NCBI RefSeq assembly: GCF_026571515.1
Contig: NW_026858509.1
Coordinates: 248,001-312,000 of the forward strand
Origin: Ruditapes philippinarum
Lineage: Eukaryota
DNA: 64,000 nucleotides
Direction: 5' to 3'
A model generated the notes under the pieces. The model was not told the origin of the DNA and searched no databases. It saw only the letters and a list, made by a program, of their open reading frames with translations. Shown here piece by piece: positions 121-62,071 of the stretch; the first letter of the stretch is position 1; every line of letters begins with the position of its first letter. The translations under genes and the position numbers were made by a program.

Positions 121-886
121 ATGAGAAAGTTTATCTAAAATGGAAACATTCTTACCAAGTTATGTAAGATAAGCTTGTTTTTATATAGGTAATAAAGACC
201 GGGAAAATGTAAAGCGTGCAGGGCAATGTATCATTGACTTTGCTAAGATAGCGGTGCATGGGTCCCTTCTAGCCATATGCAGGTAGGTCTTGAACTTGTA
301 AATCTTTTTTTTTCCCATAAACTCATTTAGATGCCAGATCGTCAATAATTTATCTGAGACAGTCAGTTTTGAGTTTGACAGTTTTTGTTTTTAAAGTAAA
401 TAGTGGTTTGTTAGTATTTAGGCGGCCCAAGATACACTTGAGACAGTTATTATGGCCTTAAGCTGTTTCCTAATAACAACCTGTGAATGCAATATTTTCA
501 AAATTTTGTAAACTCTTGATTAAGTAAACTTCTCTTATAACGGTATCGTTTATAACGATGCTGTTGCAGTGAACCGACTCTTGATTTTTTAGATTGGTTG
601 CCTCTTGGATATAACATTATAAATTTGGCGGTCCTCTAAGTATCATTGAATGCTGAATTTACTGTAATCTGTTTAACTGTAGATGCATACATATATACAG
701 TACAACAATACAATATAATGCATGATTCTCCTTGAAAATCACTAACTCTTCATATTATTGTTAAAATAATGTATTTACCACTTTCAGCTTAGCTAGAAAA
801 ATAGTCCACATCACCTGGGTTGAGAGGCAAACAACTAAACCTCTTGTTCACCCCTATCTCATCTATATGATTTTCTATTTTTTCAG

Positions 887-1111
887 TCAAGCCCGTGTCT
901 CTCTGCAGTGTGTAAGGGAGGCAACTCACAGTTGCAATGATCGCAGCAGGAACCTGTTCTCCCTGATAACCAATGTATTTGAGACGACCATCGCTACATC
1001 GTGTAAACCAGATACATGTAATCTTGGAATGGCTGAGCATTGTATAGATCAGGGGTTTACAGCCTTGGTCATGCCTCTTTACAGAGATCAGAGTTCAGTT
1101 TTATCATGCCA
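887..1111 (+). CDS. Exon E1 (phase 2-2): helical Cys modules
   Basis: tttcag|t ... tgcca|gtaagt; [16 protein letters not shown]...CNLGMAEHC...VLSC. Confidence 0.85.
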
Positions 1112-4100
1112 GTAAGTAAACGCTTCATTTAATTGAATTTTTTTTTATATTTAAAAAAGAATATTTTTGAAAAATTAAAATCTCCATTTAACATATGGGA
1201 AATTTTAGGTTTATATAATAATTTTTACACTTACCCTGTCTTTTCTTCTAATGGTAGTAGTAATGGTAAAGAGTCACAGTTTTAATATTACAAGTATTTG
1301 TTATATTTAAAAGTATTGCTTTTATGTTTCATGTAAATTTGGAATATGAATGGTATTATATAGGCCCCTACTATTATTGCCCAGAAATAATTCACAGTGG
1401 AGCATCTGGTACCTTCCTTCACCATTTAAAACTGGAATGATTTTAAACAGAGCCTATGTGAAATAAAACTAAAGATCATATTAAAGAATAACCTGATATA
1501 CCAATAAAAAGCTTGTAAATTGTGTGATGACAGTCTTGAATAGGTTTTTTTGGTATTGCAATACCTCTGTAGACTACTAGATATACATTTATAACTTCTA
1601 TAAATACAGAATTTATTTTCCTTTAGTGGTATGAAAATAAATATTTCATGAGTGGTGGTAGCCACGAGTAAATATAACAATTTTCATTCCACAATGTGAA
1701 AATGAATCCTGTATTTATAGAAAAAACTTGAATTTTCTGTTTATTATATACACTTTTCACTTTCTTGACATCACATTTTGAAAGTGTCAGCTTAAAGTTT
1801 GTGTATTGTCTGAATTTACAAGAAAGAAGTTGGGCAAGACACCATTGAAAATACAGAAAATATCTTTCACTGTAGTGAAAAATAAATTTTTACAGTGAAA
1901 ATACAGACAATGAAACCAAGCATTTTATTTAATTAATATTTCTTTATATTTCATTTATATTTATATAATAAATCCCTTTCTTACCTTTGCCCATGAACAA
2001 GAAAAACCTTCAGCTAGAAATGAATGAATCCCTTTCATCCAGGCACATCTTTAAATCACTATTTACAGCTGGATACAATCTACCGTGGCCTGTGCCTTCC
2101 AACATACAGTAAGCTGTGAAGAACAATATAGGGAACATTGGCATGACAAAGAAGATAGGCCCGGCATGGAAGATAGGTCCGGCATGGAAGATAGGTCCGG
2201 CATGGAAGATAGGTCAAGTATGGAAGATAGGCCCGACATGAAAGATGGGTCCAGCATGGATTATGATAAAGGCAAGATGGGAGATTCAGATTCAAGCATG
2301 TCACTTGGGAGTTATATAGACTTAGGCTCTCCAAACAGAGAGTCTGATTCAAATAGCAGGGACTCTGGTGATTCTGCAGAAAGGGATATGTATGGTTCCC
2401 AGTCATCGTAAGTATTAGATACATTTTCATGAGTCTACCTCATTGTTGATTTTTGTTGTTTTCTGTTCGTATTGTAAAAGTTCCTTATTTGATATATATG
2501 ATAGTTCATGTATAGAGCATTGATAATTGATAGATATACTTATGATAAACAAAATGAATCGTATACATGAAGAATATATGACTTCAGGAATAATGATTTT
2601 TTTTTCTTTTCTTGTATTCCTTTGAGTCCTTTCTAGAAATGTAGAGAGATTTCATTATTTTATCTTATCTAAATGTTTAAAAAGGAATTGTAATTTATGT
2701 TATTTTTAACACACAATTCTCCCCTTTTGGGCAGCTCTATACTGGTGAGATGCTAATTATTTACATTCCAGAAGGGTAAAAGTTAAACATACATACAAAC
2801 GTATGGCAAACATTGTTTTACTTTTATATATTATACTAGGTCTGATGAGAAGGATAGTATGGGTAGTTTTGAAAGTACAGAAAGCAACAAAAGATTGAGG
2901 GAGTATTTGGAGTTTGTTAAAGATATGAGACAACAAGTAAACATGAAATATGATTATCAAGACAAAATGGAACAAGAAGATGATGAAAGCATTGAAAATG
3001 ACGGTAGGTTTCCTCGTCAGATTAATGGACCATTCCATTTTTTAATGACTATGTATTATTCCAGTGTAGGAATTGGACAAACAGTCAGTCAATTTGAAGA
3101 GGAATGTATACACTGGAAAGGTCCATTGATTTGTACTGTTGGTTTTGTAATTGATTGATTGATTAATGAAGTTGAATGGAAATATAAAAAAAACTTACCT
3201 TGCTGAATATATGCAATGAATTTGCCATTCTTTGAATGCTGAACAGTCCATAGGTTAGTTTAAGCGATTTTAATATCAAAAATGATAATAATAGATGGTT
3301 AATGCACCATTGATTATTAACATCTGCAGGACACATTTAAAGCCCAAGCCTGCATGCAGGGCGAAGAATTTAATAAGTCTGAGGCCTTGTTAATCATTTA
3401 TGTTTCTTATTGATATATTTATGAAGGGACCTGTGTGTATTGTATAACTTTGAAACTTTTCTCATGACCAGATTTGGAAACATGTGAGCAGGAGAAAGTA
3501 ACAGGGCCATGCCGCGGAGCATTGCCTCGATGGTTTTTCAACTCTGAAACAGAGGACTGTGAGAGATTTATCTATGGTGGTTGCCAAGGTAACAAGAACA
3601 ATTTCGATAGTAAGGAAGAATGTATGGCACGCTGTATAAAGATTCCCGTCTGTGAACAGCCAAAGGTTGTAGGACGTTGCAAAGCTGCGTTTAGACGTTT
3701 CTTCTATAACGGGACATCAATGGCTTGTGAAGAGTTTATCTACGGTGGTTGCGATGGTAATGGAAACAACTTTGAAACAGAAGAAGCTTGCCAGAAAGCA
3801 TGTGAAATGAGGGAAGAACAAGGTTTGTTATTAATTGATTGAGAGACTGTTATAACATTTTACTGGTTAAAATTTAGAATACAGAATGTAAAAAATCCTT
3901 GCCACTTGCGATCTTCTGCAAAATAGATTATTTATTTTAAAAAAGTGGTAAAACCTGAATTTCTGCCATTAAATCAGTTTGTATTACATGTTTTTTAAGA
4001 ATGATTTTTAAAAATATATGTCATTAAAATAAGAGTGTCAGCACAATAATTTGAAAGGATTGCTCTTGAACTGTCTTATATAATTTTGTTAGTTCTTATT

Positions 4101-7100
4101 TGGTACTTAATTTGGTTTTGAATTTAAAGGAGAGGATGACAATAAAATAATGGAGGACAAAGACAAGAAAGAAAGAAGTGGTAACAATCTTGCTTATATG
4201 CTAGAAACAATCAGAGGAAATGCACATGGTCTGGTTAAAATGTTAGAAGGTGAACCATCGAGGGATGAAGATAAGGACATGCCAACACAGATTTTTGATC
4301 AGCTGGAGACTGAAGTCATGAAACTGAAAGAGGAAATTAAAGAAGCAATGGGTGGGTCAGAAAAGCAGAGGATTATTAGGAGACTGCAGGTGACAGAAAA
4401 GAAATTTAAAGCTTTCATGGAAATGAATGGGATGTCAGTGGATATTGATGAAGACCATGATGAAATGAGAGAAAGAATTGATGAAGTAAAGATGTATCTA
4501 GATGAGAGATTAAAGGATCAGATGGAAGAGTTGAAAGGAAGATTTGAAAGTATCAAGTATTCTATAAATTTCTTGACTTCAAAACAGGACACCTTCTGTG
4601 ATAAAGATGATGCAGAAAAGATGGACTATGAAGATGTCAAACCTGGTCTTGAAGTATTCTTTGCAATTAATGCGCTACTGGAAAGTCGTTATGTAAACAA
4701 GGAAAAGATTTGTAGGTAAGTGAGAAATCTTGTTTCCTTGATTATATCAGTTGTAGCTATAACTGTATAGATAGTATTTTGTGTTGGATGCAATCTTGAG
4801 TTCTATGTGTACCTATGAAAAGTCAGATGAGCAGCGTCATGACAAAACCAACATAATGGGTTTGCGACCAGCATGAATCCAGACCATTCTGCGCATCCGC
4901 GCAGTCTGATCAGGATCCATGCTGCTCGCTTACAAACCCTATTACAAGTAGAGAAACTGATAGCAAACAGCATGGATACTGTACTCTTGATTTTTATCAC
5001 CTTTAACGCATGAAAAAAACTCATTTTTTTTCTAGAATATTTTATTTTGATATCAGATAATGATAATAAAAACGGTAAAAATATAAATAAGTTCTACTTT
5101 GTTTTAGGATATCTTACTAATAATTAGCTAATAATTAATAATAAAATGAGAAATAAATTTTACTTTTTGCAGGTTACATGAAAAGATTGAGATGTCCATC
5201 GAGGAGATGGATATGTCTAGAGACATCCCTGAAGAACTTAAAGAGAACATGGAAGCCTCGCTAGAGTACCTGAGTATAGTAGTAGGAAGAATATGCATGC
5301 CCGAGGATGGAGAAGAAGAAGAAGAATGTTTACCATATGAGGATCCAGATGGTACTTGTGATTCACTAGCCACTGCCTTATGTCTGAATACAAATGAATT
5401 TTCTGCTGCAGTTTTAGTAGCTCAAAGGGACAACATGTTTGATAAAGTTTGTCAGTAAGTGTGAACTTCTTGTAAATGTATATTTGATCTTTAGTTAAAA
5501 TTCCAGAATTTTAGTGTTTGTCAGTCAGTGTGAACTTCATGTAAATATATATTTTGATCTTTATAGTTTAAATTCCAGTATTAGAGTTTGTCAGTTAATG
5601 GGAACTACAATGTACATGTTAATGTATATTTGATCTTTAGTGTCAAAGTTTCAAAAAGACAACAATGTACTGATTTTAACATTATTTAGTTTTTACAGAA
5701 TTTATTTTAAGTTTGATTGTGTAGGAAGCTAAAAGCATATAGATACATTTTCAAATGCGTTCCTTGAACCAACCAGCACTGAGCAATGACTGTAAAGTTT
5801 CTTGCTCAAAGAAACAATAGCTTGTTCCTGACAGGGTTTGAACCCATATGGCAAGCAATTATGAGATTACTAGTCTGACATGTTAACCACTTGGCCATGC
5901 GGCCAAACTGTCACCTTAGGGCAGTAACATGTTAACTTCTTTTAAAATTAAATAGGAGTTAACCTGTTATTGTACTAAGGAGACAACATGTATTATTGTG
6001 ATCTTTCTAGAATGGCTGAAGATGCTCTAAGATGTGTTAAGCGAACAACAGCAACATGTCCAGAAGATAACATTCCAAGAGATGCTACACGTGTTAAAAT
6101 TATTATAGACCGACTGCTAGGTGATAAATGTATATTACGACATGAATGTAAGCCTACACCTGAGTGTGACCCTGATGGGGCCATCGAAGAATGTTTCACT
6201 CTTCCAGCAAGAGGCGCAGACTTCTGTCAAGAATTTGAAAGTTCAAATTTACCATGCATTAAGAAGAAACTTGAGGCATGCAAATATTCAGAGGACGTTA
6301 CTCTTGTACAATATGAAATGGAATTGTTTATAAGAAGTTACGACCCTTCCAAAGAATGCGGTATAGATGTCAGCTTAATGTTGGAAGATGTTACAACATC
6401 TGTATCCGTGTGTTTTGTGAAGATGATCCATGGTCTGAGACATGGTTTGGAAACCATGGATACATTCAACAAGGCAATGTGCATGGCTCAATTATCTTAT
6501 CACAAATGTATAGAAGACAAGGATGTCCCTTACCTTGTTGATCTAATTAATTCACAACATAAAGAATTTTTTGGGAACTTCTGGGAAAGAAATTGTGGGT
6601 GGATGGAAGACATGGACGAAGAAGATGATGACAAACTAGAGATTGTGCCTATAGGTATTTATAGATTTGATGTACTTAGGGCTTTAAGGCCCATTATGCC
6701 TCAGAAATGCTTTAATTTTTATTTCTTTATGAAAGCTTTTTATTTTCATTGTCCTATTATAGTTTATTACAAGTAACTTATTGGCTTATTGCCTGAACTA
6801 TATTTTGTTCCTATTGCTTTTTGCAATTGGTACTGTTACAGTGATTTAGTATTTTGTATGGAAGTCACAATACTACTTTGTTTACATTTTGCTTCTTTTC
6901 TGTTGAATAATTCCACATTCAGTTCTACTTTCTTCAGTTTATAAGCCTTACATAAACATTGAGATACACCTGTTTTTCAAATATTTTTTGTAAACAAATA
7001 GATTACATACATACTTGAAATGCATACACAGAAATCATGATTACATTTTCAGATTTGACAGGTTGTAATGTAGATAAAGTTTTGCGTGTAACAGCATCAT

Positions 7101-55100: not shown

Positions 55101-58100
55101 AAATTAAATTCATGTTTACCAACTATTTAATTTCTTCCGATTTCAAAAGCCATCATGGTACCTGTCTGACGTATACTTAATACATGTTATTGCTTCATAC
55201 ATTTCATATTTAAAATTATTATTTAAAAATAAAGATTTCACTGGTTCCCATACTGTGTGTAAGATGTCTGCCTTTTTCAAAAAATGTTGTAACGCAATCT
55301 ACGATATTTCAGCCATGCTACTTTTGGTCACTTCTGGAGCGTTTCTTATACAATATCCTGTCATCACCGCTTCTTTATCTTGTTTGACATTTATTCATTT
55401 AAACACAAGTTGCCTTTAACATTTCATGGTTAATTTTGTTTTAAAGGTAAAGATTATAATCTCAGATGGCGCCATATTAGCGTTGCTATGAAGTTAAATA
55501 TCATTACGTTGCTCCGTCCGTTAATTTGACGTCATTTTTGCAACACAAAATGTACGCACCTTCATTGCCTATAATCGCCGTAAACAAGCTGTTTATTTAC
55601 GTATGACATCATAATTTACACTGAATATCATGTTATACTATCCTATGATGTCACAAAATTAAAACGAGAGATTGCATTAAAATTACATCTTTTAGCAACT
55701 TTTTATTCGAGTAGCTATCATCATGAAATCAAAGTGCTCCGTGGTTCGTTGATCATGTTGCCATGGTGATCGGCGCTTTGCGAATATTACTTTTATCATG
55801 TTTTTTAATTTAGAAATATGTAGCAGATAAATACTTAAGTAAAGTATTAAATCATCATATTGATATGTCTGCTTAAAATAATTTTATAGCCTTGTCTACG
55901 AACTTTCCGGACAGCCCTCGTACATGTATTTTCTGTAATGAATATACATTTTGTGTGAATATATATTTTATTTTTATACTTTAATTTATGACTTTTCTTG
56001 TAACAATTTTTACAAAGTGAATACTGTTTTTAGATATTTTTGGTATTTTTTTGCATTCCATTAACCAATATGCTTTAAAGGTGGAGTTTTAAAGTGATTG
56101 AGTATAGGTCAAGGTCACTGAGGCTAAATATAGATTTTCTTACTTTTTCTCATACTGCCATTTTTATGCTTGCAGAGCATTCATCAGTCTTGCTAATGTA
56201 TTCTTCTTGTTTGAATTTTTACTTTCTGCCATACTAAATATTGTATTTGGATTTCTCCATCTTTAAATCTTGACAAAATCATTTATCAGTTTTAGGGAAA
56301 ATTTCAAAATATGAATTGACTTAATATTGAGCAGTGCAGACAATGATGCTGCAATTTGTTAATTATAAACATACATATTTTTTCTTCTTTGTTTTCTGTA
56401 AATTTTCTGACCCAGTCATACTTTATAACTATTTCTTACTTGCTTATTATTATTTTTTTTTTATTTTGCTTTTTTTGTCTAAAGAAAAATACAAGGCTTT
56501 AAATATATATAAGGTTCAAATTTTGGTAATGATTGTTAGATAATGATATTATGTGAAGGTGTAAGTCACAGACTAACATTCATACTAACCTGGTGATATG
56601 CTGAGAACGTCAGTGGTTCTACTCAGGTGCCCATTTGTGCCTGAAATAATGCAAGGAAGGGCATGTGAGGTCTTCCTCTACCAGTATAGCTGAAAAGTCC
56701 CCATATGACCAATACTGAGTTGGTGCAATGTAAAAACCAAACCCCCCCCCCCCCCCAAAAAAAAAAAAATTAAAACATTAAGGTTTTCACATCCTTTGCT
56801 ATGGTCAAACCATTTGTGTGTGAGAGCTCCTTTCACCATTTGTAATTGTATTAAGACATATCCCTGTTCAACTATCATGTTCTAACTGTTGTATTATCTT
56901 TAAAAAATGTTTATTTTATTTATTATTGCTATACTGTTCATTATTTAGCAATCTTTCAGTCTTATAATCATGTGTCTGTGTGTTGTTTTTCTCTGTTGTT
57001 GTTTTCTCTTTTGTATAGTTATTTCAGACTTTTGTCTCCCTTTAGTAGTTAACTGCTTTACAACAAAGTTCCTTTAATGTTCAAGTCTTAATACTTCTAG
57101 TTCTTCTGTATTGCTTGAAAAAGATGTTTCGCTTTTAATCTCCAATAACTTCCTTTTTTTTCACTCCTTCCTTTGCAAAGTATATTTCATTATTACAAAA
57201 CAAAATATATCTTGAAATTCCATTATGCCCTAATGATTTTACTTTTTGAGATGATTCCATCATATTTAAAATAACACAAGTTTAATATTTGAAATTATCT
57301 AAATTGGATTTTTTTTATTGTAAAAGATATCTTAATAAGATGATTTTGTTTGTTTGTTTTTATTGTTGTTTTGTTTTTTGTTTTTGATTTTTAAATAATT
57401 TAGATTATGTGGATCTTTTTGACCCTTTGTTGTGCAAAAAATCTGAAAAAAAGTGTGATTCTCTTAATCAAAGTTTTCTTTAATGAGACATTATTTGAGC
57501 CACGCCATGACAAAACCAACATAATGGGTTTGCGACCAGCATGGATCCAGACCAGACTGCGCATCCGCGCAGTCTGATCAGGATCCATGCTGTTTGCTTA
57601 CAAACCCTATAACAAATAGAGAAACTGATAGCGAACAGCATGGATCCTGATCAGACTGTGCGGATGCGCAGGCTGGTCTGGATCCATGCTGGTCGCAAAC
57701 GCATTATGTTGGTTTTGTCGTGACGCGGCTCATTTGTTTGAATATATTTACAGAACTGCTGTAGATGTTAATGATGCGGTAGGGCAAAATCTACCAGGCT
57801 GCTCTCCTGTACCTTTCTCTATTGTTGAGGCAGTTTTGATCAACAACAGTGACTGTATTGACTCATTGCTTGTCGGAGTAGAGACACACCCTTGGAAGAC
57901 ATGCATCAGTGAATTCTTCTCAAGTGTCAGTATAAATAAAAATAGTTTTTAAATCTTTACCATAAATCATCCAGTTAGTTCATTTGGTAGAGTATTGGAC
58001 TGCGAATCGGGCGACTCTGGTTCAATTCCCAGATAATGCAAGTCACTTTTGTTATGATTGATCATGAAATCCTTTCTACGGTCATTTGCACTGTACCTCT

Positions 58101-61100
58101 GCTCTGGCATGAACAAATGATAATAGTTTCTTGCAAAAGTGAAGGGAACTAGTACTGGTAAACTCCTTGACAGGCTCTGTCCAGGAACAATGTGGTGGCT
58201 GAACTGTGCTCTGGTAAATTCAATATGGCTCCCTGTCGTGATCCAGAGGGTAAACTACCAACACCAAGTCCTAGACTTATGTGAACAACAACCCCCTTTT
58301 ACAGTCCCCCATTACTCATACATAAATTATGAATACCCTGTAGTCTCTTAACCAAATGCTACATTTTGGTGCTACTTTTATGCATACGAATAACTGTTTT
58401 GTTTGCAGTATCCATGATACAAATATTGGTTCATATTTTTGTAGAGCATACAGATCTCATTGTGTCTAGCATTCAGAAAATCTATGAATTATATGTCACA
58501 GGGTGAGAAAATTGGCATCCCTGACTGGGACTTTAACCTGGGACTCTCTGATAACTGTTCTGTAGGTCGACTGACTGAGCCAGCTCCCCTTCTGGTGAAC
58601 AGTTTTATACCATTACATTTTCCCCAGTTATAATAGAATTTGCTCTAAAGGGTACAGAGAAAAATGTGAATGGACTAGGAGTAAAATACATCATGTTGAG
58701 CAACAAAGGTCAGAGGGAGTGAAAAAAGTGCATCCTGACTGACATTGACCCTCAAAATACTGTTCTGTAGCTCTACCGACTGAGCATTAAGTTTACACAT
58801 TTTGTGTACATTTATTATTAGTGGTCTCTGCAAATACATGTAGTTTAATGAAGTAAAACATTTGATTCACAGCTAAATTTTTCAGATGAACATGCCTTCT
58901 GCCCATTTCCAGGGTTTTCTATAAATGTCATGAAGCTTAATTTGAGCAGCCAGTAGTATACATAACAGTAAAGCCTGGTCAGACAGGATATATTTGCAAC
59001 TTATAATTTGGGGCATAGGTTTGAAGGTTTTCACTTTTATGTGATGCTACAAAAACAACCGATTTTTGCCAAGTGTCAAGGGGGATACTGAACCAATTTT
59101 AACAGCATTGTAACAGATGATATGCATTGCCAGTCTGTTAATCATGAAAACTCTGTAGCATATAATGCATTATTCCTGCTTGTCTTTAAAGAGTTGAATT
59201 ATAGTAGATGTAATAAATGACAGAAAAATACTGCATGCTAGCCCACAGGAAGATGCTGGTTATCCAGCTTTTCAATGTTTGATAAAAAACAACAAAAAAT
59301 GATGCTTTTTTTATTTTTCAGTTTACATTGGAATCTATGTGTAAAGGTTACCAAGATTTCCTGAAATGTTTGATGACAACTGAGACAGTGTCACATGTTG
59401 ATTATGACTTGATAACACCTCATATGGAGACATTCAAATATCTAAACCAGTCTTGCACACAGCCAGGTAAATAAAATTTATTGTGCAAATTTGCAAAATG
59501 TTGTTATTGTTTATTGCTGCATGTACATGTATTTATTTAAGGCATGATCATTTGAAGTGTTATTTAACAAGTTAGAAATATTATTTTTAAATCATAACAT
59601 TTGGAGGAACACTATCTTGATAAGGTGAAATATGCATTTGAGCAAAGAAATATGTTGAAAACTCCAGGGAAACAAGCCGTTTTTCAATGTACAGTAAAAT
59701 CTCACTAATGAGACCACTGAAGGGATTTAACATATCTGGTCTTTATAACAGTATATTATACCTCATTTGCATATGCTCTTCTATATTTAATATGACGTCA
59801 CCCGGTCCATAAACCGCATACAGACCAGGGGCGGTCCATAATTCTTATGAAGACCGTTTAAACGTAACTTTCACGACGTGCGAATTTCACGATGACACAA
59901 ACAGAATGGCCAGGCGATTTGCCTTTTTATCAGAGACATAAATTTATTACATGTTGATCAAAAGTTAATTTAATTATAAATTTTATTTATACAGTTTTTG
60001 AAATTCTTAAAGTTCGGGTTTTTGGCCTAGTAACATTAAATATTTAATTTGATTAACAAAAATGGAATATTAAAAGAAGAGCATGATTTTTTTGCTGCAT
60101 CGCTTGAAAATAATAAAACAAAATCCGACTAGGGTTTTGGATATTTCACACACTGAACAAGTAAAATTATTATTTGAAAGAGAATAATAGTAAAATGACA
60201 GCACAAAACAAATGGATGAAAGGATTTAGATTCGGTATAATATAACAAATAAAACATGGCCTTTCGGGCAAAATGCAAGTTTACGGACTGGTTGGTCAGA
60301 CCTCGAAAGGAATATGGCCCTCAGCTGCGCTTCGGGCCATATACCTTCCTCAGTCTGACCAACCAGTCCGTAAACTTGCATATTGCCCTCAAGCCCATGT
60401 TTTATTTGTTAATTGGTCTCATTAATGAGTTTGGTAAGACAGAAAACCAAGCAAGACTTTTAAAGGATTTCATATTCATTGTACAAGTGTTTAATTCTGT
60501 TTAATTTATGTTTGTTCTATTTGCAGATGGTCCTATCCCTGCAGGTAAGAATTGTTATTAAATTATATTGTGAAATAAATCTAAAACCCTTCTTTTTTCT
60601 TCAAATAATTAGTTGTTTGAGTTTTGCTAAAATTCTTTAATATTTTCATATTGTTGCTCTGACAAGAGGAAGAGAAACTTTTAACCGAAATTACATCATT
60701 CTTTAATGTTATGGTTGAGTCCACATCTACTGTCATAATAAGTAATACTTAGTTCAGCCTCTGACAACTGTGTAGGGGAACAAATTCTTTTGCTCCATGG
60801 TCTAGATCGTTGTTATTTTCTCATGTAAGCTGGAGGTCAGGAGTTCATATCCCAGCCACAGTAGGATCATTTCTTATGCATTTGCATTTTTCTGTACCAA
60901 ACTAAAATGATAAAGGCTCATCTGGGGTGCCTGGCTCTTGGAATTTGTTTGAAAACAGAAATGGTTTCTGATTTAAAAAACAGAAACGGTTTCTGATTTA
61001 ATTATTAAAATAATTTCTGATTCTGTTTCTGATTTAAATATGGAAATGTTTTCTGATTTAACAACTGAAATGGTTTCTGATTTAAAAACAGAAATAGTTT

Positions 61101-62071
61101 CTTATTAAATTAGAGAAGTGGTTTCTGATTTAGAACCAAAATGATTTCTGCTTTGAAAATGAGTCATAAGTTCATCATAAATGGTGATAAGTGTTGGTAC
61201 ACTTCAATCCTAATATATCTTCTAGATATCATTGTTTCAGATGAAGGTTGTCAACCAACAGAAGCTGCTAGGTGTATTCTCACACATGGGATGTTATTTA
61301 CCTTCGCTCCTCTTTCTTCTGTACAACAGAAACAGCAAATGTGTGACAGGTGAATTTATGATTATTACAGAATTGTTTCTAATCAAAACAGCAATGAATA
61401 TGTGTTTCACAGTTAAATAAGAAGTAAATAATTATGTGCAAAAGTTTAAAAAATGTTGTCAAGTGACTACTAAAATATCCCCAAAGTAACTAGATCACAC
61501 CAAACCCTTAGGTTTATTAAATTAACTCACATTTTTGTCATAAGTTTATTTATTTATGTTAACCAAGAAAGTTTAATTTAAAAGCATTTTGTTTTTATAC
61601 AATTAATCAGGTACAAAACTGTAACTGAAGAATGCATGACCAAATGGAACAGTTGTAACTCCACCCATGTGGCTGATGTTAAACAATTCTTTGACAAGAT
61701 CGTAGATGAGTATGTATAGCAATATTTTGTGAATACTGAGTATTTTTATCACTTTTTTAGTTTAAAAAATATATATAGTACAATTTTTGTTATTCTGTTT
61801 TCATTCTGCATATATTTACATGTCTACATGGAGACAGAAGTGCATCCTTTGAGCTTTAATTAGTCAAAATAGAAATTAATTTACTATTCTTATTGAATGA
61901 TTTTAGATCTGAAATGTGTTATGCACCAAAGGAGATTGAGTGCCCTAAAGAACCAGAGGAACCCAAAGAACCAAAATGTGAACCTGGAATGGCCATGACT
62001 TTAATTTCTGAGCTCAGCATATCCTTGTCAAAATGTATCACATCAATGACAATAAAAGATCAAGTTTGCCA
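887..62071 (+). CDS. Partial giant multi-exon gene (58 exons in window, ~3,820 aa, no start or stop): Cys-rich acidic mosaic protein with ~32 six-Cys helical modules, 4 Kunitz, 3 WAP, 2 LU, 2 half-VWC domains
   Basis: Exons joined by hand at AG/GT sites. Each donor phase matches the next acceptor phase through 58 exons, except one 1-nt frameshift in E42. Recurrent C-x8-C-x7-C motif and recognisable Kunitz/WAP/LU Cys patterns. Confidence 0.88.
1586..1972. mobile_element. Large-hairpin non-autonomous element (Crypton-like architecture); same family as 49088-49492
   Basis: ~150-bp imperfect palindrome centred on gagtggtggtagccacgagt; body shared with the 49 kb copy. Confidence 0.6.
2069..2407 (+). 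CDS. Exon E2 (2-2): module C4/C5 then MEDRSG repeats and Ser/Asp-rich low complexity
   Basis: ttacag|c ... tcatc|gtaagt; [16 protein letters not shown]. Confidence 0.8.
2840..3003 (+). CDS. Exon E3 (2-1): acidic helical segment
   Basis: ctag|g ... gacg|gtaggt; in frame with E2 and E4. Confidence 0.75.
3472..3822 (+). CDS. Exon E4 (1-1): two tandem Kunitz/BPTI domains (P1 Arg and Lys)
   Basis: [27 protein letters not shown] and [26 protein letters not shown]...C. Confidence 0.95.
4130..4715 (+). CDS. Exon E5 (1-2): charged coiled-coil-like region plus module Cys
   Basis: aaag|ga ... tgtag|gtaagt; 189-aa ORF. Confidence 0.85.
4829..4978. mobile_element. Truncated copy of the palindromic Sola-like MITE
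   Basis: Left arm and centre match 57497-57650. Confidence 0.8.
5173..5454 (+). CDS. Exon E6 (2-2): helical Cys modules
   Basis: ttgcag|g ... tgtca|gtaagt. Confidence 0.87.
5740..5900 (-). mobile_element. Degenerate tRNA-derived SINE
   Basis: Reverse complement reads tggccaagtggttaa...gggttcaaaccc...tttgagcaagaaacttta. Confidence 0.55.
5910..5985. repeat. ~76-bp hairpin (mini-MITE); second copy at ~32099-32173
   Basis: tgtcaccttag..gttaacttct / taggagttaac..ctaaggagaca; same arms at 32.1 kb. Confidence 0.65.
6011..6654 (+). CDS. Exon E7 (2-1): three helical Cys modules
   Basis: ttctag|a ... atag|gtattt; within 262-aa ORF. Confidence 0.9.
7053..7167 (+). CDS. Exon E8 (1-2)
   Basis: tttcag|at ... 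tgcaa|gtaagc; [11 protein letters not shown]...ASYC. Confidence 0.8.
7743..8513. mobile_element. piggyBac-like non-autonomous element
   Basis: TTAA|ccct ... aggg|TTAA; TIR degenerate. Confidence 0.55.
8867..9009 (+). CDS. Exon E9 (2-1)
   Basis: ttttag|t ... aaaa|gtaagt; ..[16 protein letters not shown]. Confidence 0.82.
9277..9373 (+). CDS. Exon E10 (1-2)
   Basis: tcacag|tc ... tgtca|gtaagt; [15 protein letters not shown]. Confidence 0.82.
9792..10063 (+). CDS. Exon E11 (2-1): module end, acidic linker, furin site RTKR
   Basis: ttacag|a ... atag|gtataa; RTKR at 10006-10017. Confidence 0.85.
10091..10645. mobile_element. Kolobok-like MITE (TTAA target, AGG..CCT ends) hosting a nested palindromic MITE
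   Basis: ttaa|aggagctccactaagg ... ccctcagtggagtccct|ttaa. Confidence 0.65.
10130..10365. mobile_element. ~235-bp palindromic MITE, GAG..CTC ends, 4-bp TSD (Sola-like)
   Basis: aaat|gagccg...cggctc|aaat; long inverted arms ggatccagaccagcctgcgcatccgcgcagtctgatcagg. Confidence 0.85.
10763..10844 (+). CDS. Exon E12 (1-2)
   Basis: ttacag|tg ... tgcag|gtaagc. Confidence 0.8.
11632..11940 (+). CDS. Exon E13 (2-2)
   Basis: tcacag|g ... atgag|gtaatt. Confidence 0.85.
12769..12884 (+). CDS. Exon E14 (2-1)
   Basis: ttgtag|g ... gatg|gtatgc; ..[11 protein letters not shown]. Confidence 0.8.
13231..15210 (+). mobile_element. Helentron/HINE (pearl-like) element with 168-bp internal tandem repeats and a duplicated 3' end
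   Basis: 5' ttatcccccgccga; (GTCC)n microsatellite; units at 13315, 13483, 13651, 13819, 13987; subterminal inverse tcggcgggggatataa plus short hairpin and cttgtt, ending at ~14499 and ~15210. Confidence 0.85.
15249..15347 (+). CDS. Exon E15 (1-1): half-VWC-like Cys module
   Basis: [14 protein letters not shown]...[10 protein letters not shown]; NAGNAG acceptor cagcag. Confidence 0.85.
15633..15716 (+). CDS. Exon E16 (1-1): half-VWC-like Cys module
   Basis: [28 protein letters not shown]. Confidence 0.85.
15965..16073 (+). CDS. Exon E17 (1-2)
   Basis: acacag|ag ... caaaa|gtaagt; EKCRDHE..ESMCQ. Confidence 0.78.
16481..18198 (+). mobile_element. Helentron/HINE (pearl-like) element with ~9 x ~167-bp satellite units
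   Basis: 5' ttttagctcacctgagc and GTC-rich microsatellite; 3' caggtgagcg, hairpin agggccatcatggccct, cttgtt; inserted in a T-run. Confidence 0.88.
18398..18661 (+). CDS. Exon E18 (2-2)
   Basis: tcatag|t ... tgctc|gtaagt. Confidence 0.85.
18676..19492. mobile_element. Large-hairpin element
   Basis: gaaatagatatcaattct...agaattgatatctatttc palindrome (18676-18846); arm copy gagtgcattgttgtagaataatgcacg at ~19408. Confidence 0.65.
20165..20431 (+). CDS. Exon E19 (2-2)
   Basis: tttcag|a ... tgtcc|gtaagt. Confidence 0.87.
21095..21295 (+). CDS. Exon E20 (2-2)
   Basis: tttcag|g ... tgcag|gttttt (weak donor). Confidence 0.83.
21450..21920 (+). mobile_element. Degenerate copy of the 16481-18198 family
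   Basis: gtccggccggcgtccgtcc, acatctcctct, and 2 units with gtctaccaagttt..aaagccctggggtcaaaatt. Confidence 0.7.
22050..22210 (+). CDS. Exon E21 (2-1)
   Basis: ttccag|a ... actg|gtacaa. Confidence 0.8.
22225..22860. repeat. Degenerate ~29-30-bp minisatellite
   Basis: Repeated aaagctttaaccatt....ataactctt. Confidence 0.85.
23076..23918 (+). CDS. Exon E22 (1-1): Ser/Lys/Asp/Glu low-complexity exon with 11-aa and 13-aa tandem repeats
   Basis: ctacag|ct ... tcag|gtaaat; 282-aa ORF. Confidence 0.8.
23613..23903 (+). repeat. Coding 39-bp tandem repeat x ~7.5 ([13 protein letters not shown])
   Basis: Near-identical catcaaagtcggcatcagggtcagctggtagtaaaaaag units. Confidence 0.95.
25479..25679 (+). 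CDS. Exon E23 (1-1): completes the module interrupted by E22
   Basis: ttttag|ga ... agag|gtaaca; [19 protein letters not shown]. Confidence 0.8.
26334..26425 (+). CDS. Exon E24 (1-0): Ly6/uPAR (LU) domain 1, N-half
   Basis: [24 protein letters not shown]. Confidence 0.85.
27023..27194 (+). CDS. Exon E25 (0-1): LU domain 1, C-half
   Basis: [20 protein letters not shown]; 10 Cys together with E24. Confidence 0.88.
27530..27617 (+). CDS. Exon E26 (1-2)
   Basis: ttgcag|aa ... tgcag|gtatag. Confidence 0.8.
28007..28225 (+). CDS. Exon E27 (2-2)
   Basis: taacag|a ... tgcaa|gtaaga. Confidence 0.85.
28524..28648 (+). CDS. Exon E28 (2-1)
   Basis: ctttcag|g ... aaag|gtaaga; the upstream ttttag acceptor gives a stop. 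Confidence 0.75.
29111..29421 (+). mobile_element. Degenerate short HINE ending in the E29 polypyrimidine tract (related fragment at ~15745-15860)
   Basis: tttagctcatctg ... cattgtgcaaaaactttaatgtagcccattattc ... gtgctcttgt. Confidence 0.6.
29431..29616 (+). CDS. Exon E29 (1-1): WAP four-disulfide core 1
   Basis: [23 protein letters not shown] (8 Cys). Confidence 0.87.
30185..30346 (+). CDS. Exon E30 (1-1): WAP domain 2
   Basis: [38 protein letters not shown]. Confidence 0.92.
30872..31024 (+). CDS. Exon E31 (1-1): WAP domain 3
   Basis: [39 protein letters not shown]. Confidence 0.92.
31265..31355 (+). CDS. Exon E32 (1-2): unnamed Cys module, N-part
   Basis: [29 protein letters not shown]. 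Confidence 0.85.
31409..31586. repeat. 26-bp minisatellite x ~6.8
   Basis: taatgtcagtttctctatatctgtaa, perfect copies. Confidence 0.95.
31895..31971 (+). CDS. Exon E33 (2-1): unnamed Cys module, C-part
   Basis: [25 protein letters not shown]. Confidence 0.85.
32320..32640. repeat. ~31-bp minisatellite overlapping the E34 acceptor
   Basis: tatttagattaaccatgtgaaatgac units. Confidence 0.85.
32622..32795 (+). CDS. Exon E34 (1-1): Kunitz domain 3 (atypical reactive loop)
   Basis: [33 protein letters not shown]; last Cys codon split T|GT with E35. Confidence 0.9.
33426..33936. mobile_element. piggyBac-like MITE
   Basis: TTAA|cccattac ... gtaatggg|TTAA. Confidence 0.7.
34015..34188 (+). CDS. 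Exon E35 (1-1): Kunitz domain 4
   Basis: [35 protein letters not shown]. Confidence 0.92.
34605..34719 (+). CDS. Exon E36 (1-2)
   Basis: tttcag|aa ... tgcag|gtaaaa; 115 nt like E8 and E41. Confidence 0.78.
34809..35045 (+). mobile_element. tRNA-derived SINE (decayed relatives at ~12020-12265, ~24855-24945, ~45065-45140, ~56590-56745)
   Basis: A-box tggccgagtgg, B-box-like ggttccagcc; shared body ggttctac..ggtgcc..cctccacc..aaagct..aaagtc..atatgacc. Confidence 0.7.
35280..35528 (+). CDS. Exon E37 (2-2)
   Basis: attcag|a ... tgtgt|gtaagt. Confidence 0.85.
35775..36163 (+). CDS. Exon E38 (2-1)
   Basis: tttcag|a ... aatg|gtgagt. Confidence 0.88.
37030..37133 (+). CDS. Exon E39 (1-0): LU domain 2, N-half
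   Basis: [23 protein letters not shown]. Confidence 0.87.
37755..37980 (+). CDS. Exon E40 (0-1): LU domain 2, C-half, then furin site RKKR
   Basis: [24 protein letters not shown]; RKKR at 37950-37961. Confidence 0.88.
38630..38744 (+). CDS. Exon E41 (1-2)
   Basis: ttacag|ta ... tgcga|gtaaat. Confidence 0.8.
39391..39673 (+). CDS. Exon E42 (2-2), contains apparent +1 frameshift near gggg 39406-39409
   Basis: tttcag|t ... tgcat|gtgagt; as written hits TAA at 39413-39415. Confidence 0.7.
40329..40574 (+). CDS. Exon E43 (2-2), super-repeat copy 1
   Basis: tttcag|t ... tgctt|gtaagt; paralog of E51. Confidence 0.87.
41088..41563. mobile_element. Large-hairpin element (GC-rich arms)
   Basis: Palindrome 41088-41237 centred on ggtaacgaggcttgccgagttacc; tttcttgcata / tatgcaagaa inverted pair. 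Confidence 0.7.
42085..42327 (+). CDS. Exon E44 (2-2)
   Basis: ttacag|g ... tgcgc|gtaagt; paralog of E52. Confidence 0.87.
42930..43098 (+). CDS. Exon E45 (2-0)
   Basis: ttgcag|t ... gat|gtaagt; paralog of E53. Confidence 0.85.
43721..43865 (+). CDS. Exon E46 (0-1)
   Basis: caacag|ttc ... ccag|gtgtgt; 145 nt like E54. Confidence 0.83.
44384..44401 (+). CDS. Micro-exon E47 (18 nt, 1-1), EETIPA linker
   Basis: Long pyrimidine tract-tgcag|aggagacaattccagctg|gtaaga; paralog of E55. Confidence 0.72.
44845..44953 (+). CDS. Exon E48 (1-2)
   Basis: [23 protein letters not shown]; 109 nt like E56. Confidence 0.87.
46724..46819 (+). CDS. Exon E49 (2-2)
   Basis: [23 protein letters not shown]; paralog of E57. 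Confidence 0.82.
47189..47299 (+). CDS. Exon E50 (2-2)
   Basis: [26 protein letters not shown]. Confidence 0.83.
47807..48055 (+). CDS. Exon E51 (2-2), super-repeat copy 2
   Basis: ttctag|t ... tgctt|gtaagt. Confidence 0.87.
48493..48720 (+). CDS. Exon E52 (2-2)
   Basis: ttacag|a ... tgcct|gtaggt. Confidence 0.85.
49088..49492. mobile_element. Large-hairpin element, second copy of the 1586-1972 family
   Basis: Shared atgaaaataaatatttcatg..tagcca.gagt..aatcctgt.tttata..ttttctgtttattatatac..gtgaaaaataaattt. Confidence 0.6.
50007..50913. mobile_element. pogo/Tigger-like (Tc1/mariner superfamily) MITE
   Basis: TIRs cagtaaactccgcttataacgaac / gttcgctataagtgaagtttactg; TA target duplication; no ORF. 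Confidence 0.88.
51390..53728 (+). mobile_element. Helentron/HINE element with alternating 146/157-bp units, inserted in a TT of the 42-bp minisatellite
   Basis: 5' tttatacccccc hairpin and (GGTC)n; tgtcc unit starts at 51514, 51660, 51817, 51963, 52120, 52266, 52423, 52569; 3' gggggtat, hairpin atcacatttagtgat. Confidence 0.85.
54891..55920. mobile_element. Tc1/mariner-like non-autonomous DNA transposon
   Basis: TIRs cgagggatgtccggaaagttc / gaactttccggacagccctcg; TA duplication; internal inverted pair catggagcactttga / tcaaagtgctccgtg. Confidence 0.88.
57497..57731. mobile_element. Second full copy of the palindromic Sola-like MITE
   Basis: attt|gagcca...cggctc|attt. Confidence 0.85.
57754..57925 (+). 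CDS. Exon E53 (2-0)
   Basis: ttacag|a ... agt|gtcagt; [21 protein letters not shown] matches E45. Confidence 0.83.
57968..58268 (+). mobile_element. tRNA-derived SINE with Meta-type central domain
   Basis: tagttcatttggtagag..ggttcaattcc head followed by gattgatcatgaaatcctttctacggtcatt. Confidence 0.6.
59322..59466 (+). CDS. Exon E54 (0-1)
   Basis: [24 protein letters not shown]. Confidence 0.85.
59752..60413. mobile_element. Large-hairpin element nested in a small pogo-like MITE (59692-~60432)
   Basis: Palindrome 60243-60412; tatattatacc / ggtataatata inverted pair; host arms cagtaaaatctcactaatgagacc / ggtctcattaatgag. Confidence 0.65.
60527..60544 (+). CDS. Micro-exon E55 (18 nt, 1-1), DGPIPA linker
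   Basis: ttgcag|atggtcctatccctgcag|gtaaga. Confidence 0.72.
60952..61152. repeat. ~24-bp degenerate minisatellite
   Basis: aaaacagaaatggtttctgattta units. Confidence 0.8.
61241..61349 (+). CDS. Exon E56 (1-2)
   Basis: [23 protein letters not shown]. Confidence 0.87.
61611..61709 (+). CDS. Exon E57 (2-2)
   Basis: [24 protein letters not shown]. Confidence 0.83.
61907..62071 (+). CDS. Exon E58 (2-2); gene continues past the window
   Basis: ttttag|a ... tgcca|gtaagt. Confidence 0.83.

What the first reader, a model, noticed from the sequence alone, without database searches (positions are those of the whole stretch)
887..62071. Giant (>3,800 aa) mosaic protein on a backbone of ~32 six-Cys helical modules, with Kunitz, WAP, LU and half-VWC cassettes
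Seen: 58 phase-compatible exons encode repeats of C1-x(4-8)-C2...C3-x8-C4-x7-C5...C6 with helical-looking sequence between the Cys, interleaved with 4 Kunitz, 3 WAP, 2 LU, 2 half-VWC and one unnamed module. There is no start or stop, so the full protein is larger. Known, from memory: the C-x8-C-x7-C spacing occurs in neuritin/CPG15, the RGM N-terminal three-helix bundle and nematode DUF19-type proteins. Inference: this is an extracellular scaffold combining tandem helical bundles with protease inhibitors. I do not recognise this architecture as any named protein (not papilin, kielin/chordin or lustrin). Candidate roles are shell/periostracum/mucus matrix, egg coat or haemolymph defence. Because RGM-N, VWC and three-finger folds bind BMP/TGF-beta ligands in other proteins, a growth-factor trap is also possible.
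Basis: partly seen in the sequence, partly recalled or inferred. Interest (0 to 1): 0.9.

Follow-up and report, generated by a model that had tools for sequence, protein, structure and literature searches.

The report
Giant membrane-anchored helical-repeat mosaic protein gene
The window holds the middle of one very large, transcribed animal gene (about 6,700 residues predicted) for a membrane-anchored surface protein made of cysteine-stapled helical repeats with plugged-in protease-inhibitor domains; related proteins occur in molluscs and ribbon worms, and none has been studied.

Summary
My own splice model gives 55-59 phase-compatible + strand exons between 887 and 62071 (about 3,650 aa). Spliced transcript contigs from two studies confirm all 10 introns tested, joining LU, helical, WAP, an unnamed 8-Cys module and Kunitz exons in one open frame. 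Pfam confirms 4 Kunitz and 2 WAP. The third WAP, both LU and both VWC halves are sub-threshold.

New here:
- The gene runs about 55 kb further downstream. It passes more modules and a VWA domain, then reaches a VWD domain starting with NDPH, an EGF, one transmembrane helix and a 100-aa tail with a stop codon. It is therefore a type I membrane protein of about 6,700 aa.
- A profile of 23 modules finds only 28 proteins among 1.84 billion. The large ones are uncharacterised mollusc and nemertean proteins. Six of them show the VWD-TM-tail end, and two of those a signal peptide.
- Whole-module exons are phase 2-2, half-modules 2-1 and 1-2, and foreign cassettes 1-1. This is the pattern of exon shuffling into a phase-1 intron inside the module.

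The module has no Pfam, PDB-sequence or convincing fold match. Only a language-model lead points to nematode DUF19/CPG4, and nothing supports RGM or neuritin. The function (a protease-resistant, possibly shed surface coat) is inferred. The scan had noted two sub-features of this same window.

The parts
189..282 (+). C-half of a helical module (low-scoring exon; its N-half lies upstream of the window)
   Evidence: Splice model
887..1111 (+). Whole 6-Cys helical module, phase 2-2
   Evidence: module HMM hit
2069..2407 (+). Module start (C1-x7-C2) followed by an acidic 18-nt x6 coding repeat
2840..3015 (+). Acidic linker exon (donor uncertain, 3003 or 3015)
3472..3822 (+). Two Kunitz domains on one phase 1-1 exon; P1 residues Arg and Lys
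   Evidence: Pfam E 8.5e-42; sequence read
4133..4715 (+). Acidic, helix-prone 193-aa exon with no family
5173..5454 (+). Remainder (C3 to C6) of the module begun at 2069
6011..6654 (+). Two whole modules plus an N-half on one exon
   Evidence: 98.6% identical to metagenome fragment P0002
8836..9009 (+). Helical N-part exon (acceptor 8836 or 8867)
9277..9373 (+). C-half, phase 1-2
9792..10063 (+). N-half plus acidic tail, phase 2-1
10763..10844 (+). C-half, phase 1-2
11632..11940 (+). Whole module with an acidic insert
12769..12884 (+). Doubtful exon (score 10)
15249..15347 (+). VWC-like half cassette, phase 1-1
   Evidence: Pfam VWC E 0.001, below cut-off
15645..15716 (+). VWC-like half cassette, phase 1-1
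   Evidence: Pfam VWC E 0.0028, below cut-off
18398..18661 (+). Module (acceptor 18398 or 18454)
20165..20431 (+). Whole module, 8 Cys
21095..21295 (+). Short whole module
22050..22210 (+). N-half, phase 2-1
23076..23918 (+). Ser/Lys/Gly-rich low-complexity cassette, phase 1-1, with 33-nt x4.3 and 39-nt x7.5 coding repeats
26334..26425 (+). LU (three-finger) first half
   Evidence: Pfam UPAR_LY6 E 2.4e-4, below cut-off
27023..27194 (+). LU second half
   Evidence: weak; donor confirmed by RNA joint
27530..27617 (+). C-half
   Evidence: Both splice sites confirmed by RNA
28007..28225 (+). Whole module
   Evidence: RNA joints
28524..28648 (+). N-half, phase 2-1; the cassette block follows it
   Evidence: RNA joints
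29431..29616 (+). WAP-like 8-Cys cassette
   Evidence: RNA joints; Pfam WAP only E 0.74; Cys spacing fits
30185..30346 (+). WAP
   Evidence: Pfam E 1.1e-09; RNA
30872..31024 (+). WAP
   Evidence: Pfam E 2.2e-10; RNA
31265..31355 (+). Unnamed 8-Cys module, first exon
   Evidence: RNA; no Pfam hit
31895..31971 (+). Unnamed 8-Cys module, second exon
   Evidence: RNA
32622..32795 (+). Kunitz (P1 Asp); its sixth Cys codon spans the splice
   Evidence: Pfam E 6.9e-16; RNA
34015..34188 (+). Kunitz (P1 Asn)
   Evidence: Pfam E 8e-15; RNA loose end at 32798 matches its start
34605..34719 (+). C-half closing the module opened at 28524
35280..35528 (+). Whole module
35775..36163 (+). Whole module plus N-half
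37030..37133 (+). LU first half
   Evidence: Pfam UPAR_LY6 E 0.0015, below cut-off; BLAST to the LU region of P0003
37755..37980 (+). LU second half
39516..39673 (+). Acidic stretch plus C-half (the exon may start earlier, as the ORF opens at 39396)
40329..40574 (+). Whole module (the one folded)
42085..42327 (+). Whole module
42930..43098 (+). Block-repeat exon A (3 Cys)
43721..43865 (+). Block-repeat exon B, N-half
44845..44953 (+). Block-repeat exon C, C-half
46724..46819 (+). Block-repeat exon D, N-half
47189..47299 (+). Block-repeat exon E, C-half
47807..48055 (+). Whole module
48493..48720 (+). Whole module
57754..57925 (+). Second copy of block exon A
   Evidence: 18/53 identical
59322..59466 (+). 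Second copy of block exon B
   Evidence: 16/48 identical
61241..61349 (+). Second copy of block exon C
   Evidence: 17/35 identical
61611..61709 (+). Second copy of block exon D
   Evidence: 14/30 identical
61907..62071 (+). Second copy of block exon E; last exon inside the finding

Best explanation
The window holds the central part (about 3,650 aa) of one transcribed gene, which I predict to have about 106 exons and 20.2 kb of coding sequence (about 6,700 aa). It encodes a type I membrane protein.

The ectodomain is a long array of about 75-aa disulfide-stapled helical modules with the motif C1-x7-C2 ... C3 ... C4-x6/7-C5 ... C6. Foreign domains have been shuffled into this array: Kunitz, WAP, LU, VWC-like, VWA and Ser/Lys/Gly-rich low-complexity cassettes.

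The shuffling route can be read from the intron phases. Whole-module exons are phase 2-2. Many modules are split between C3 and C4 by a phase-1 intron. Every foreign cassette is a phase 1-1 exon or exon pair sitting in such an intron.

Next to the membrane lie a VWD domain that begins with NDPH, an EGF, one transmembrane helix and a 100-aa cytoplasmic tail.

Inferred, not shown: the protein forms a protease-resistant coat on an epithelial surface, analogous to a transmembrane mucin or proteoglycan. Its Kunitz and WAP domains would block serine proteases; two Kunitz domains have Arg or Lys at P1. Its Ser-Gly-rich cassettes may carry glycans. The huge ectodomain can be released or held non-covalently after Asp-Pro autocleavage at the NDPH site, as happens at GDPH in MUC4, MUC2, RGM and FCGBP.
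For: Shown:
- Exon chain, strand bias and intron phases. The phase tally is 27 exons 2-2, 16 exons 1-2, 15 exons 1-1 and 14 exons 2-1.
- Spliced transcripts from two studies join the LU, module, WAP, unnamed and Kunitz exons. All 10 tested introns are confirmed, and the longest laid contigs are 13.5 and 17 kb. The joined stretch is an open 540-aa frame.
- Kunitz and WAP by Pfam; VWA at E 3.2e-30.
- Downstream exons carry NDPH..TFDG and GLCG..DGN VWD motifs, an EGF, a TM helix, and a tail ending in a stop codon with a poly(A) signal 22 nt later.
- Relatives: six scanned relatives (Tubulanus, Haliotis, two Elysia, Aplysia, one unnamed transcript) end in [N/G]DPH-VWD, one TM helix and a short tail, and two of them (Tubulanus, Elysia crispata) start with a signal peptide. 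The five that match the profile show 16-26 modules; Aplysia shows none. Pfam places VWD and EGF_Teneurin in Tubulanus, Haliotis, Elysia crispata and the unnamed transcript; Elysia chlorotica carries the same pair, and Aplysia VWD without the EGF, only in precomputed annotations.
- One module folds as five helices at pLDDT 80.
- Cassette content differs between species: SUEL lectin, LDLa, VWA, Lustrin_cystein, or none. This fits plug-in shuffling.

Established knowledge: Asp-Pro autocleavage in GDPH-type VWD domains; P1 of Kunitz is the residue after the second Cys.
Against: - RNA continuity was tested over only 6 kb of the roughly 126-kb locus. The link from the window to the TM end rests on phase compatibility, transcript length and homologue architecture.
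- The predicted size (about 6,700 aa) exceeds that of any relative found (up to 4,861 aa).
- The 5' end and signal peptide were not located.
- VWD and EGF are weak by Pfam when scored exon by exon (E 0.009 and 0.075).
- Molluscs have N, not G, before DPH, and cleavage is untested.
- No tissue, localisation, glycan or inhibition data exist.
- Two of the four Kunitz domains have atypical P1 residues (Asp, Asn).
- Raw RNA-seq runs X21 and X23 barely cover the exons.
Confidence: 0.6

Rival explanations
1. It is the same polypeptide, but its main role is as a structural matrix component (shell or periostracum, byssus, egg coat or mucus gel) after release from the cell. The membrane anchor serves only for trafficking and secretion.
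For: - Kunitz, WAP, VWA and low-complexity Ser/Lys/Gly cassettes are common in mollusc matrix proteins (my own knowledge).
- The NDPH site would allow release of the ectodomain.
Against: - The TM helix and cytoplasmic tail are kept in nemerteans, which have no shell, and in gastropods.
- No proteomic or tissue evidence was available here.
Confidence: 0.2
2. The exon chain belongs to two or more adjacent genes, for example a secreted module/inhibitor protein in the window and a separate VWD-EGF-TM gene downstream.
For: - Bivalve database models are shorter and lack the VWD end: Ylistrum 2,979 aa, Pecten 2,359 aa, Pinctada 1,641 aa.
- My dynamic-programming model forces phase compatibility, so an unbroken chain is partly a product of the method.
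Against: - No stop-terminated exon, TM helix or signal peptide was seen inside the chain.
- Transcript contigs up to 17 kb lie on the locus.
- Gastropod and nemertean relatives are single polypeptides running from the modules to the TM helix.
- Lottia's two adjacent models (159187 and 231431) look like one gene split by annotation.
Confidence: 0.12
3. It is a BMP/TGF-beta ligand trap or RGM-like co-receptor, with helical RGM-N-like modules, VWC and three-finger domains binding growth factors.
For: - It combines a helical Cys-rich region with a [G/N]DPH VWD, as RGM does.
- VWC-like and LU-like cassettes are present.
Against: - No RGM_N or neuritin hit in Pfam for any of the 23 modules.
- No RGM chain among the Foldseek or VIA matches.
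- No PDB hit with the module profile.
- It has a TM helix, not a GPI anchor.
- The VWC and LU hits are below Pfam cut-offs.
Confidence: 0.05

Closest known systems
Uncharacterised giant proteins of molluscs and nemerteans: Tubulanus polymorphus LOC141900431 (XP_074643426.1), Haliotis rufescens LOC124139581, Elysia crispata RRG08_004071, Aplysia LOC101851458, Lottia LOTGIDRAFT_231431 and 159187, Pecten LOC117338893, Ylistrum LOC132551440
   Same: - Arrays of the same helical Cys module: 13-26 profile hits per protein in all but Aplysia, which showed none.
- In the full-length ones, a VWD starting with [N/G]DPH, one TM helix and a short tail; a Teneurin-type EGF by Pfam scan in Tubulanus, Haliotis and Elysia crispata.
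   Different: - Only 20-35% identity per module.
- Cassette content differs between species.
- Ours is predicted to be larger (about 6,700 aa against 3,256-4,861 aa).
- None has a described function.
Nematode DUF19 (PF01579, T20D4.11-like) and CPG4 (PF15481) domains; insect DUF1397
   Same: - Extracellular, Cys-rich domains.
- They are among the nearest ESM-Atlas clusters for two separate exons (0.86-0.88, 177-186 shared features).
- UniProt names the Lottia fragment a 'DUF19 domain-containing protein'.
- From my memory of Pfam, DUF19 has 12 Cys in about 150 aa, which equals two of these modules.
   Different: - No HMM match in any module or in the genome.
- The module profile did not retrieve nematode proteins.
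- The known members are small secreted proteins with one or two domains.
Transmembrane mucin MUC4 and SUSD2-type proteins
   Same: A juxtamembrane VWD with a GDPH-type Asp-Pro site, an EGF, a single TM helix, a short tail and a huge ectodomain that can be shed (architecture from my own knowledge; our part).
   Different: - No NIDO or AMOP hit was seen.
- There is no Pro/Thr/Ser mucin domain.
- The ectodomain is folded helical modules plus inhibitor domains.
Repulsive guidance molecule (RGM)
   Same: A helical Cys-rich N-terminal part followed by a VWD-like domain with a GDPH autocleavage motif.
   Different: - RGM has one N-domain and a GPI anchor.
- There is no Pfam or fold match here.
Papilin, WFIKKN, eppin and lustrin A (Kunitz- and/or WAP-bearing extracellular proteins)
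   Same: Kunitz and WAP inhibitor domains embedded in a large extracellular protein.
   Different: They have a different backbone (TSP1/Ig, follistatin/NTR, Cys/Pro-rich repeats), no helical module array and no VWD-EGF-TM end.

Membership tests
Mollusc/nemertean giant helical-repeat VWD-EGF-TM proteins (uncharacterised) | Tandem array of the ~75-aa module C1-x7-C2..C3..C4-x6/7-C5..C6 | tested here: met
   A profile of 23 modules from this gene hits these proteins in 12-17 stretches each. The same HMM gives 13-26 modules per relative.
Mollusc/nemertean giant helical-repeat VWD-EGF-TM proteins (uncharacterised) | Juxtamembrane VWD beginning with [N/G]DPH | tested here: met
   NDPH..TFDG exon at contig 355947 and GLCG..DGN exon at 359995. 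BLAST matches them to the VWD start and end of P0022, P0028 and P0001. The motif is conserved in 7 relatives. Pfam VWD scored by exon reaches only E 0.009.
Mollusc/nemertean giant helical-repeat VWD-EGF-TM proteins (uncharacterised) | Teneurin-type EGF after the VWD | tested here: inconclusive
   The EGF is split over two exons, with Pfam E 0.21 and 0.075. BLAST to P0022 residues 3780-3915 gives E 4e-6 and 3e-12.
Mollusc/nemertean giant helical-repeat VWD-EGF-TM proteins (uncharacterised) | Single TM helix and cytoplasmic tail at the C-terminus | tested here: met
   Hydrophobic stretch in exon 366610-366778, last exon open to a stop at 367538, poly(A) signal 22 nt later.
Mollusc/nemertean giant helical-repeat VWD-EGF-TM proteins (uncharacterised) | N-terminal signal peptide | tested here: inconclusive
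   The 5' end was not located. Module-like exons continue to at least contig 241218.
Pfam DUF19 (PF01579) | Match to the family HMM above 23.2 bits | tested here: not met
   No hit in any exon, in the Lottia 'DUF19' protein or in the whole genome at E<=10 (the controls also did not ring, so this test is weak).
Pfam DUF19 (PF01579) | Similarity by other means | tested here: inconclusive
   DUF19 and CPG4 are among the nearest ESM-Atlas clusters for two exons (0.86-0.88), which the tool rates as a lead only. A profile-profile comparison could not be run because no DUF19 alignment was available.
RGM | RGM_N helical domain | tested here: not met
   No Pfam hit in 23 modules. No RGM chain among the Foldseek or VIA matches. 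No PDB hit with the module profile.
RGM | GPI anchor | tested here: not met
   The protein has a TM helix followed by a 100-aa tail.
Kunitz/BPTI (PF00014) | HMM match above 21 bits and six Cys | tested here: met
   Four domains score 141.6 (two domains together), 58.6 and 55.2 bits. The sixth Cys of the third domain is completed across the splice.
WAP four-disulfide core (PF00095) | HMM match above 20.8 bits and eight Cys | tested here: met
   Two domains score 38.8 and 41.1 bits. The third (29431-29616) scores 10.6 bits only but has the eight-Cys spacing, so it is inconclusive.
Ly6/uPAR three-finger (PF00021, PF00087) | HMM match above the cut-off | tested here: inconclusive
   First-half exons score 21.9 and 19.3 bits against a 24.8 cut-off, and second halves score 13-16 bits. 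Each domain is split over two exons, and the joined sequence was not searched.
VWC (PF00093) | HMM match above 27.6 bits | tested here: inconclusive
   Scores are 19.8 and 18.4 bits, covering only the C-terminal half of the model.
Transmembrane mucin (MUC4 type) | NIDO and AMOP domains and a Pro/Thr/Ser mucin domain | tested here: not met
   No such Pfam hit in any exon or relative scanned. The low-complexity cassettes are Ser/Lys/Gly-rich and total about 670 aa.

The most novel reading that the evidence does not exclude
These proteins form an undescribed class of membrane-tethered surface coat, found so far only in molluscs and nemerteans. In it, a rod of DUF19/CPG4-superfamily helical modules replaces the mucin domain. 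A conserved phase-1 intron inside the module serves as a docking site where each lineage plugs in its own 1-1 cassettes, such as protease inhibitors, lectins, VWA domains and glycan-bearing repeats.
Probability: 0.35. Interest if true: 0.6.

Novelty: new variant of a known kind. Interest (0 to 1): 0.5.

Why it matters
If the reading holds, a protein family of 3,000 to nearly 7,000 residues, conserved in two phyla and transcribed, has no name, no Pfam model for its main module and no literature. It would be a candidate major component of mollusc epithelial surfaces or secretions, which bears on host-microbe defence, aquaculture disease and biomineralisation.

The locus is also an unusually clean natural example of exon shuffling: phase 1-1 cassettes sit in a phase-1 intron inside a repeated module. 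In addition, it offers about 70 paralogous copies of one small helical disulfide module for structural study.

Tried and rejected
- AlphaFold2 on the 214-aa three-module exon without an alignment failed (pLDDT 34.6) and was not used.
- An alignment meant to give that exon depth (A3) stretched single modules across two modules, so I discarded it.
- Foldseek against the PDB found nothing at E<=0.001. VIA-align wide gave only generic three-helix matches at Z<=8.1, within the tool's stated noise for helical models.
- The module profile against PDB sequences found nothing meaningful.
- The DUF19 HMM against the whole genome gave no hit, but the control genomes were silent too.
- Pfam on all 23 modules at E<=10 showed no recurrent family.
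- Cys co-loss statistics over 51 modules, meant to infer disulfide pairing, were uninformative.
- A search for VWDE-like relatives with the Aplysia C-terminus returned only family members. The Elysia C-terminal fragment against the PDB matched only EGF domains.
- Literature searches for 12 gene identifiers returned nothing. 'DUF19 + mollusc' mostly hit DUF1943/1944 vitellogenin papers. One oyster 'DUF19 domain-containing protein' of 19 kDa appears in a norovirus-ligand table (PMC10058639) and is not obviously related.
- The 5' end was sought in 48 kb upstream without a convincing signal-peptide exon.
- A possible missing exon at 25479-25679 scores too low to call.
- P0008 and P0031 are repeat-derived false positives of the profile search.

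Spliced sequence was joined only inside a local script, to check the reading frame.

Full report
**Setting.** The window is G000:C6996:248001-312000 of a 1.4-Gb, 33% GC animal genome. Another agent's note calls it the Manila clam; I did not check this.

- Stop-to-stop reading of the + strand shows many Cys-bearing open segments that end just before GTAAGT-type donors in the same phase.
- A splice-site and codon-usage dynamic-programming model trained on the window gives 59 phase-compatible exons. When run on 264 kb of the contig it gives 55 exons between 887 and 62071 (10,959 nt, about 3,650 aa).
- HMMs of the two module halves hit 16 and 14 places on the + strand and none on the - strand at E<=0.1.

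**Transcript evidence (decisive).**
- The run search found 14 runs holding about 0.2 of the words of a 2-kb stretch that is about one-third exon.
- When contigs of X5 and X3 (two studies) were laid on 26900-32850, they skipped all ten predicted introns with GT..AG ends. A loose end matched the start of the exon at 34015.
- Only one donor had to be moved, from 29634 to 29616.
- The longest laid contigs are 13.5 and 17 kb.
- Joined in a local script, these eleven exons read as one 540-aa open frame. The order is: LU second half, C-half, whole module, N-half, WAP-like, WAP, WAP, 8-Cys unnamed module, Kunitz, Kunitz. The sixth Cys of the third Kunitz is completed across the splice.
- So the mosaic exists in RNA.

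**Cassettes.**
- Pfam confirms four Kunitz domains and two WAP domains well above their cut-offs.
- The third WAP scores only E 0.74 but has the eight-Cys spacing.
- The LU and VWC pieces are below their cut-offs, partly because each LU domain is split over two exons.
- Two Kunitz domains have Arg or Lys after the second Cys (the P1 position, from BPTI knowledge). The other two have Asp and Asn.
- The low-complexity exon 23076-23918 holds near-perfect 33- and 39-nt coding repeats. It is 29% Ser and 17% Lys.

**The module.**
- An alignment of 23 single-exon modules gives the motif C1-x7-C2, about 22 residues, C3, a variable loop, C4-x6/7-C5, about 17 residues, C6.
- With this alignment AlphaFold2 gives five helices at pLDDT 80.
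- Foldseek, VIA-align and a profile search of PDB sequences give no specific relative.
- Pfam gives no recurrent hit over the 23 modules.
- The ESM Atlas places two different exons nearest to nematode DUF19 and CPG4 clusters, and less closely to insect DUF1397 (0.86-0.88). UniProt labels a Lottia fragment as DUF19.
- The DUF19 HMM itself finds nothing. I therefore treat DUF19/CPG4 as the likeliest superfamily, but unproven.

**Beyond the window.**
- Downstream, the chain continues through more modules, two further Ser/Lys/Gly cassettes, an LU, a VWA (E 3.2e-30), a WAP-like exon, VWD exons (NDPH..TFDG and GLCG..DGN), an EGF, a TM helix and a last exon. That last exon is open for 100 codons to a stop at contig 367538, with a poly(A) signal 22 nt later.
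- In total I predict 106 exons and about 6,700 aa.
- Upstream, module halves continue to at least contig 241218. About eight tandem Pacifastin/VWC-N-like exons lie at 215872-224772. The 5' end was not found.

**Relatives.**
- The 23-module profile, scored against 1.84 billion representatives, gives only 28 hits.
- The large hits are uncharacterised proteins of scallops, pearl oyster, Lottia, Lymnaea and Batillaria, and of the nemerteans Tubulanus and Lineus. The short hits are 90-100% identical fragments of this gene from metagenome contigs.
- A second search adds Elysia, Plakobranchus, Aplysia and Haliotis proteins of up to 4,861 aa.
- Six relatives (Tubulanus, Haliotis, two Elysia, Aplysia and one unnamed transcript) end in a VWD starting with [N/G]DPH, one TM helix and a short tail. 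Two of them (Tubulanus, Elysia crispata) start with a signal peptide. The five that match the profile show 16-26 modules; Aplysia shows none. Pfam places VWD and a Teneurin-type EGF in four of the six.
- Cassettes vary: SUEL lectins and WAP in Pecten; Kunitz, VWA, LU and SUEL in Ylistrum; LDLa and LU in Haliotis; none in Tubulanus.
- No paper mentions any of twelve identifiers.

**How the mosaic arose.**
- Exon phase classes are 27 (2-2), 14 (2-1), 16 (1-2) and 15 (1-1).
- Whole modules are 2-2, N-halves 2-1 and C-halves 1-2.
- Every foreign cassette (Kunitz, WAP, VWC-like, VWA, Ser/Lys exon, and LU or the unnamed module as exon pairs) is 1-1 overall.
- The RNA-confirmed block shows the logic: the N-half at 28524 is followed by seven cassette exons, and the module closes with the C-half at 34605.
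- This agrees with two notes made earlier on this window.
- Multi-exon blocks were also duplicated: 42930-47299 matches 57754-62071, and 39516-42327 matches 47189-48720, at 28-50% identity for all but one exon pair.

**Function.**
- Shown: architecture, transcription and conservation.
- Inferred: a membrane-tethered, protease-resistant coat that carries serine-protease inhibitors and perhaps glycans. Its ectodomain would be released or held after Asp-Pro cleavage at NDPH, by analogy with GDPH sites in MUC4, MUC2, RGM and FCGBP.
- Rivals are a matrix role after shedding, a split into several genes, and a BMP trap. The last has no support.

**Verdict.** This is a real and well-observed gene. It belongs to a conserved but unnamed family and is built from known cassette types on a poorly characterised module. 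It is interesting mainly for annotation and domain evolution, with function untested.

Noticed in passing
L004:7872-8159, L010:5613-5783 and neighbours (contig 215872-224772, 23-32 kb upstream of the window): About eight tandem exons of about 40 aa match Pacifastin_I (32.7 bits, above the cut-off) and the first half of VWC. They are phase 1-1 like the other cassettes. They may be an N-terminal inhibitor array of the same gene or a separate gene.
   Followed up: partly
window 42930-48720 versus 57754-62071, and 39516-42327 versus 47189-48720: Multi-exon blocks of the gene are duplicated internally, at 28-50% amino-acid identity for all but one exon pair. These are old segmental duplications inside the gene.
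   Followed up: yes
window 23221-23362, 23613-23903 and 2151-2260: Coding minisatellites: 33 nt x4.3 at 95% identity, 39 nt x7.5 at 98%, and 18 nt x6. They are likely length-polymorphic between individuals.
   Followed up: partly
window 13314-15014, 16712-18012, 50914-54549: Large intronic satellite arrays with periods of 168, 167, 42 and 146/303 nt. They fill the 9-kb intron between exons 48720 and 57754 and other introns.
   Followed up: no
window 62998-63585 (- strand): A 195-aa ORF with an Arg/Gly-rich start and a sub-threshold GDSL/SGNH hydrolase match (E 1.2e-4). It lies in the intron after the last in-window exon and may be part of a mobile element.
   Followed up: partly
window 10127-10392, 57525-57761, 4857-5003; contig 228071-228313 and 233315-233524: A dispersed repeat gives near-identical ORF fragments (..QSDQDPCC.., ..[22 protein letters not shown]..) in several introns.
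   Followed up: no
window 29089-29287: All four runs pile up here (word depth up to 75), with many loose ends on both sides. It is probably an expressed dispersed repeat inside the intron, not an exon of this gene.
   Followed up: no
window 25479-25679: A possible extra phase 1-1 exon with a C-x8-C helix C pattern lies between the Ser/Lys cassette and the LU exons. Its score is too low to call without RNA.
   Followed up: partly
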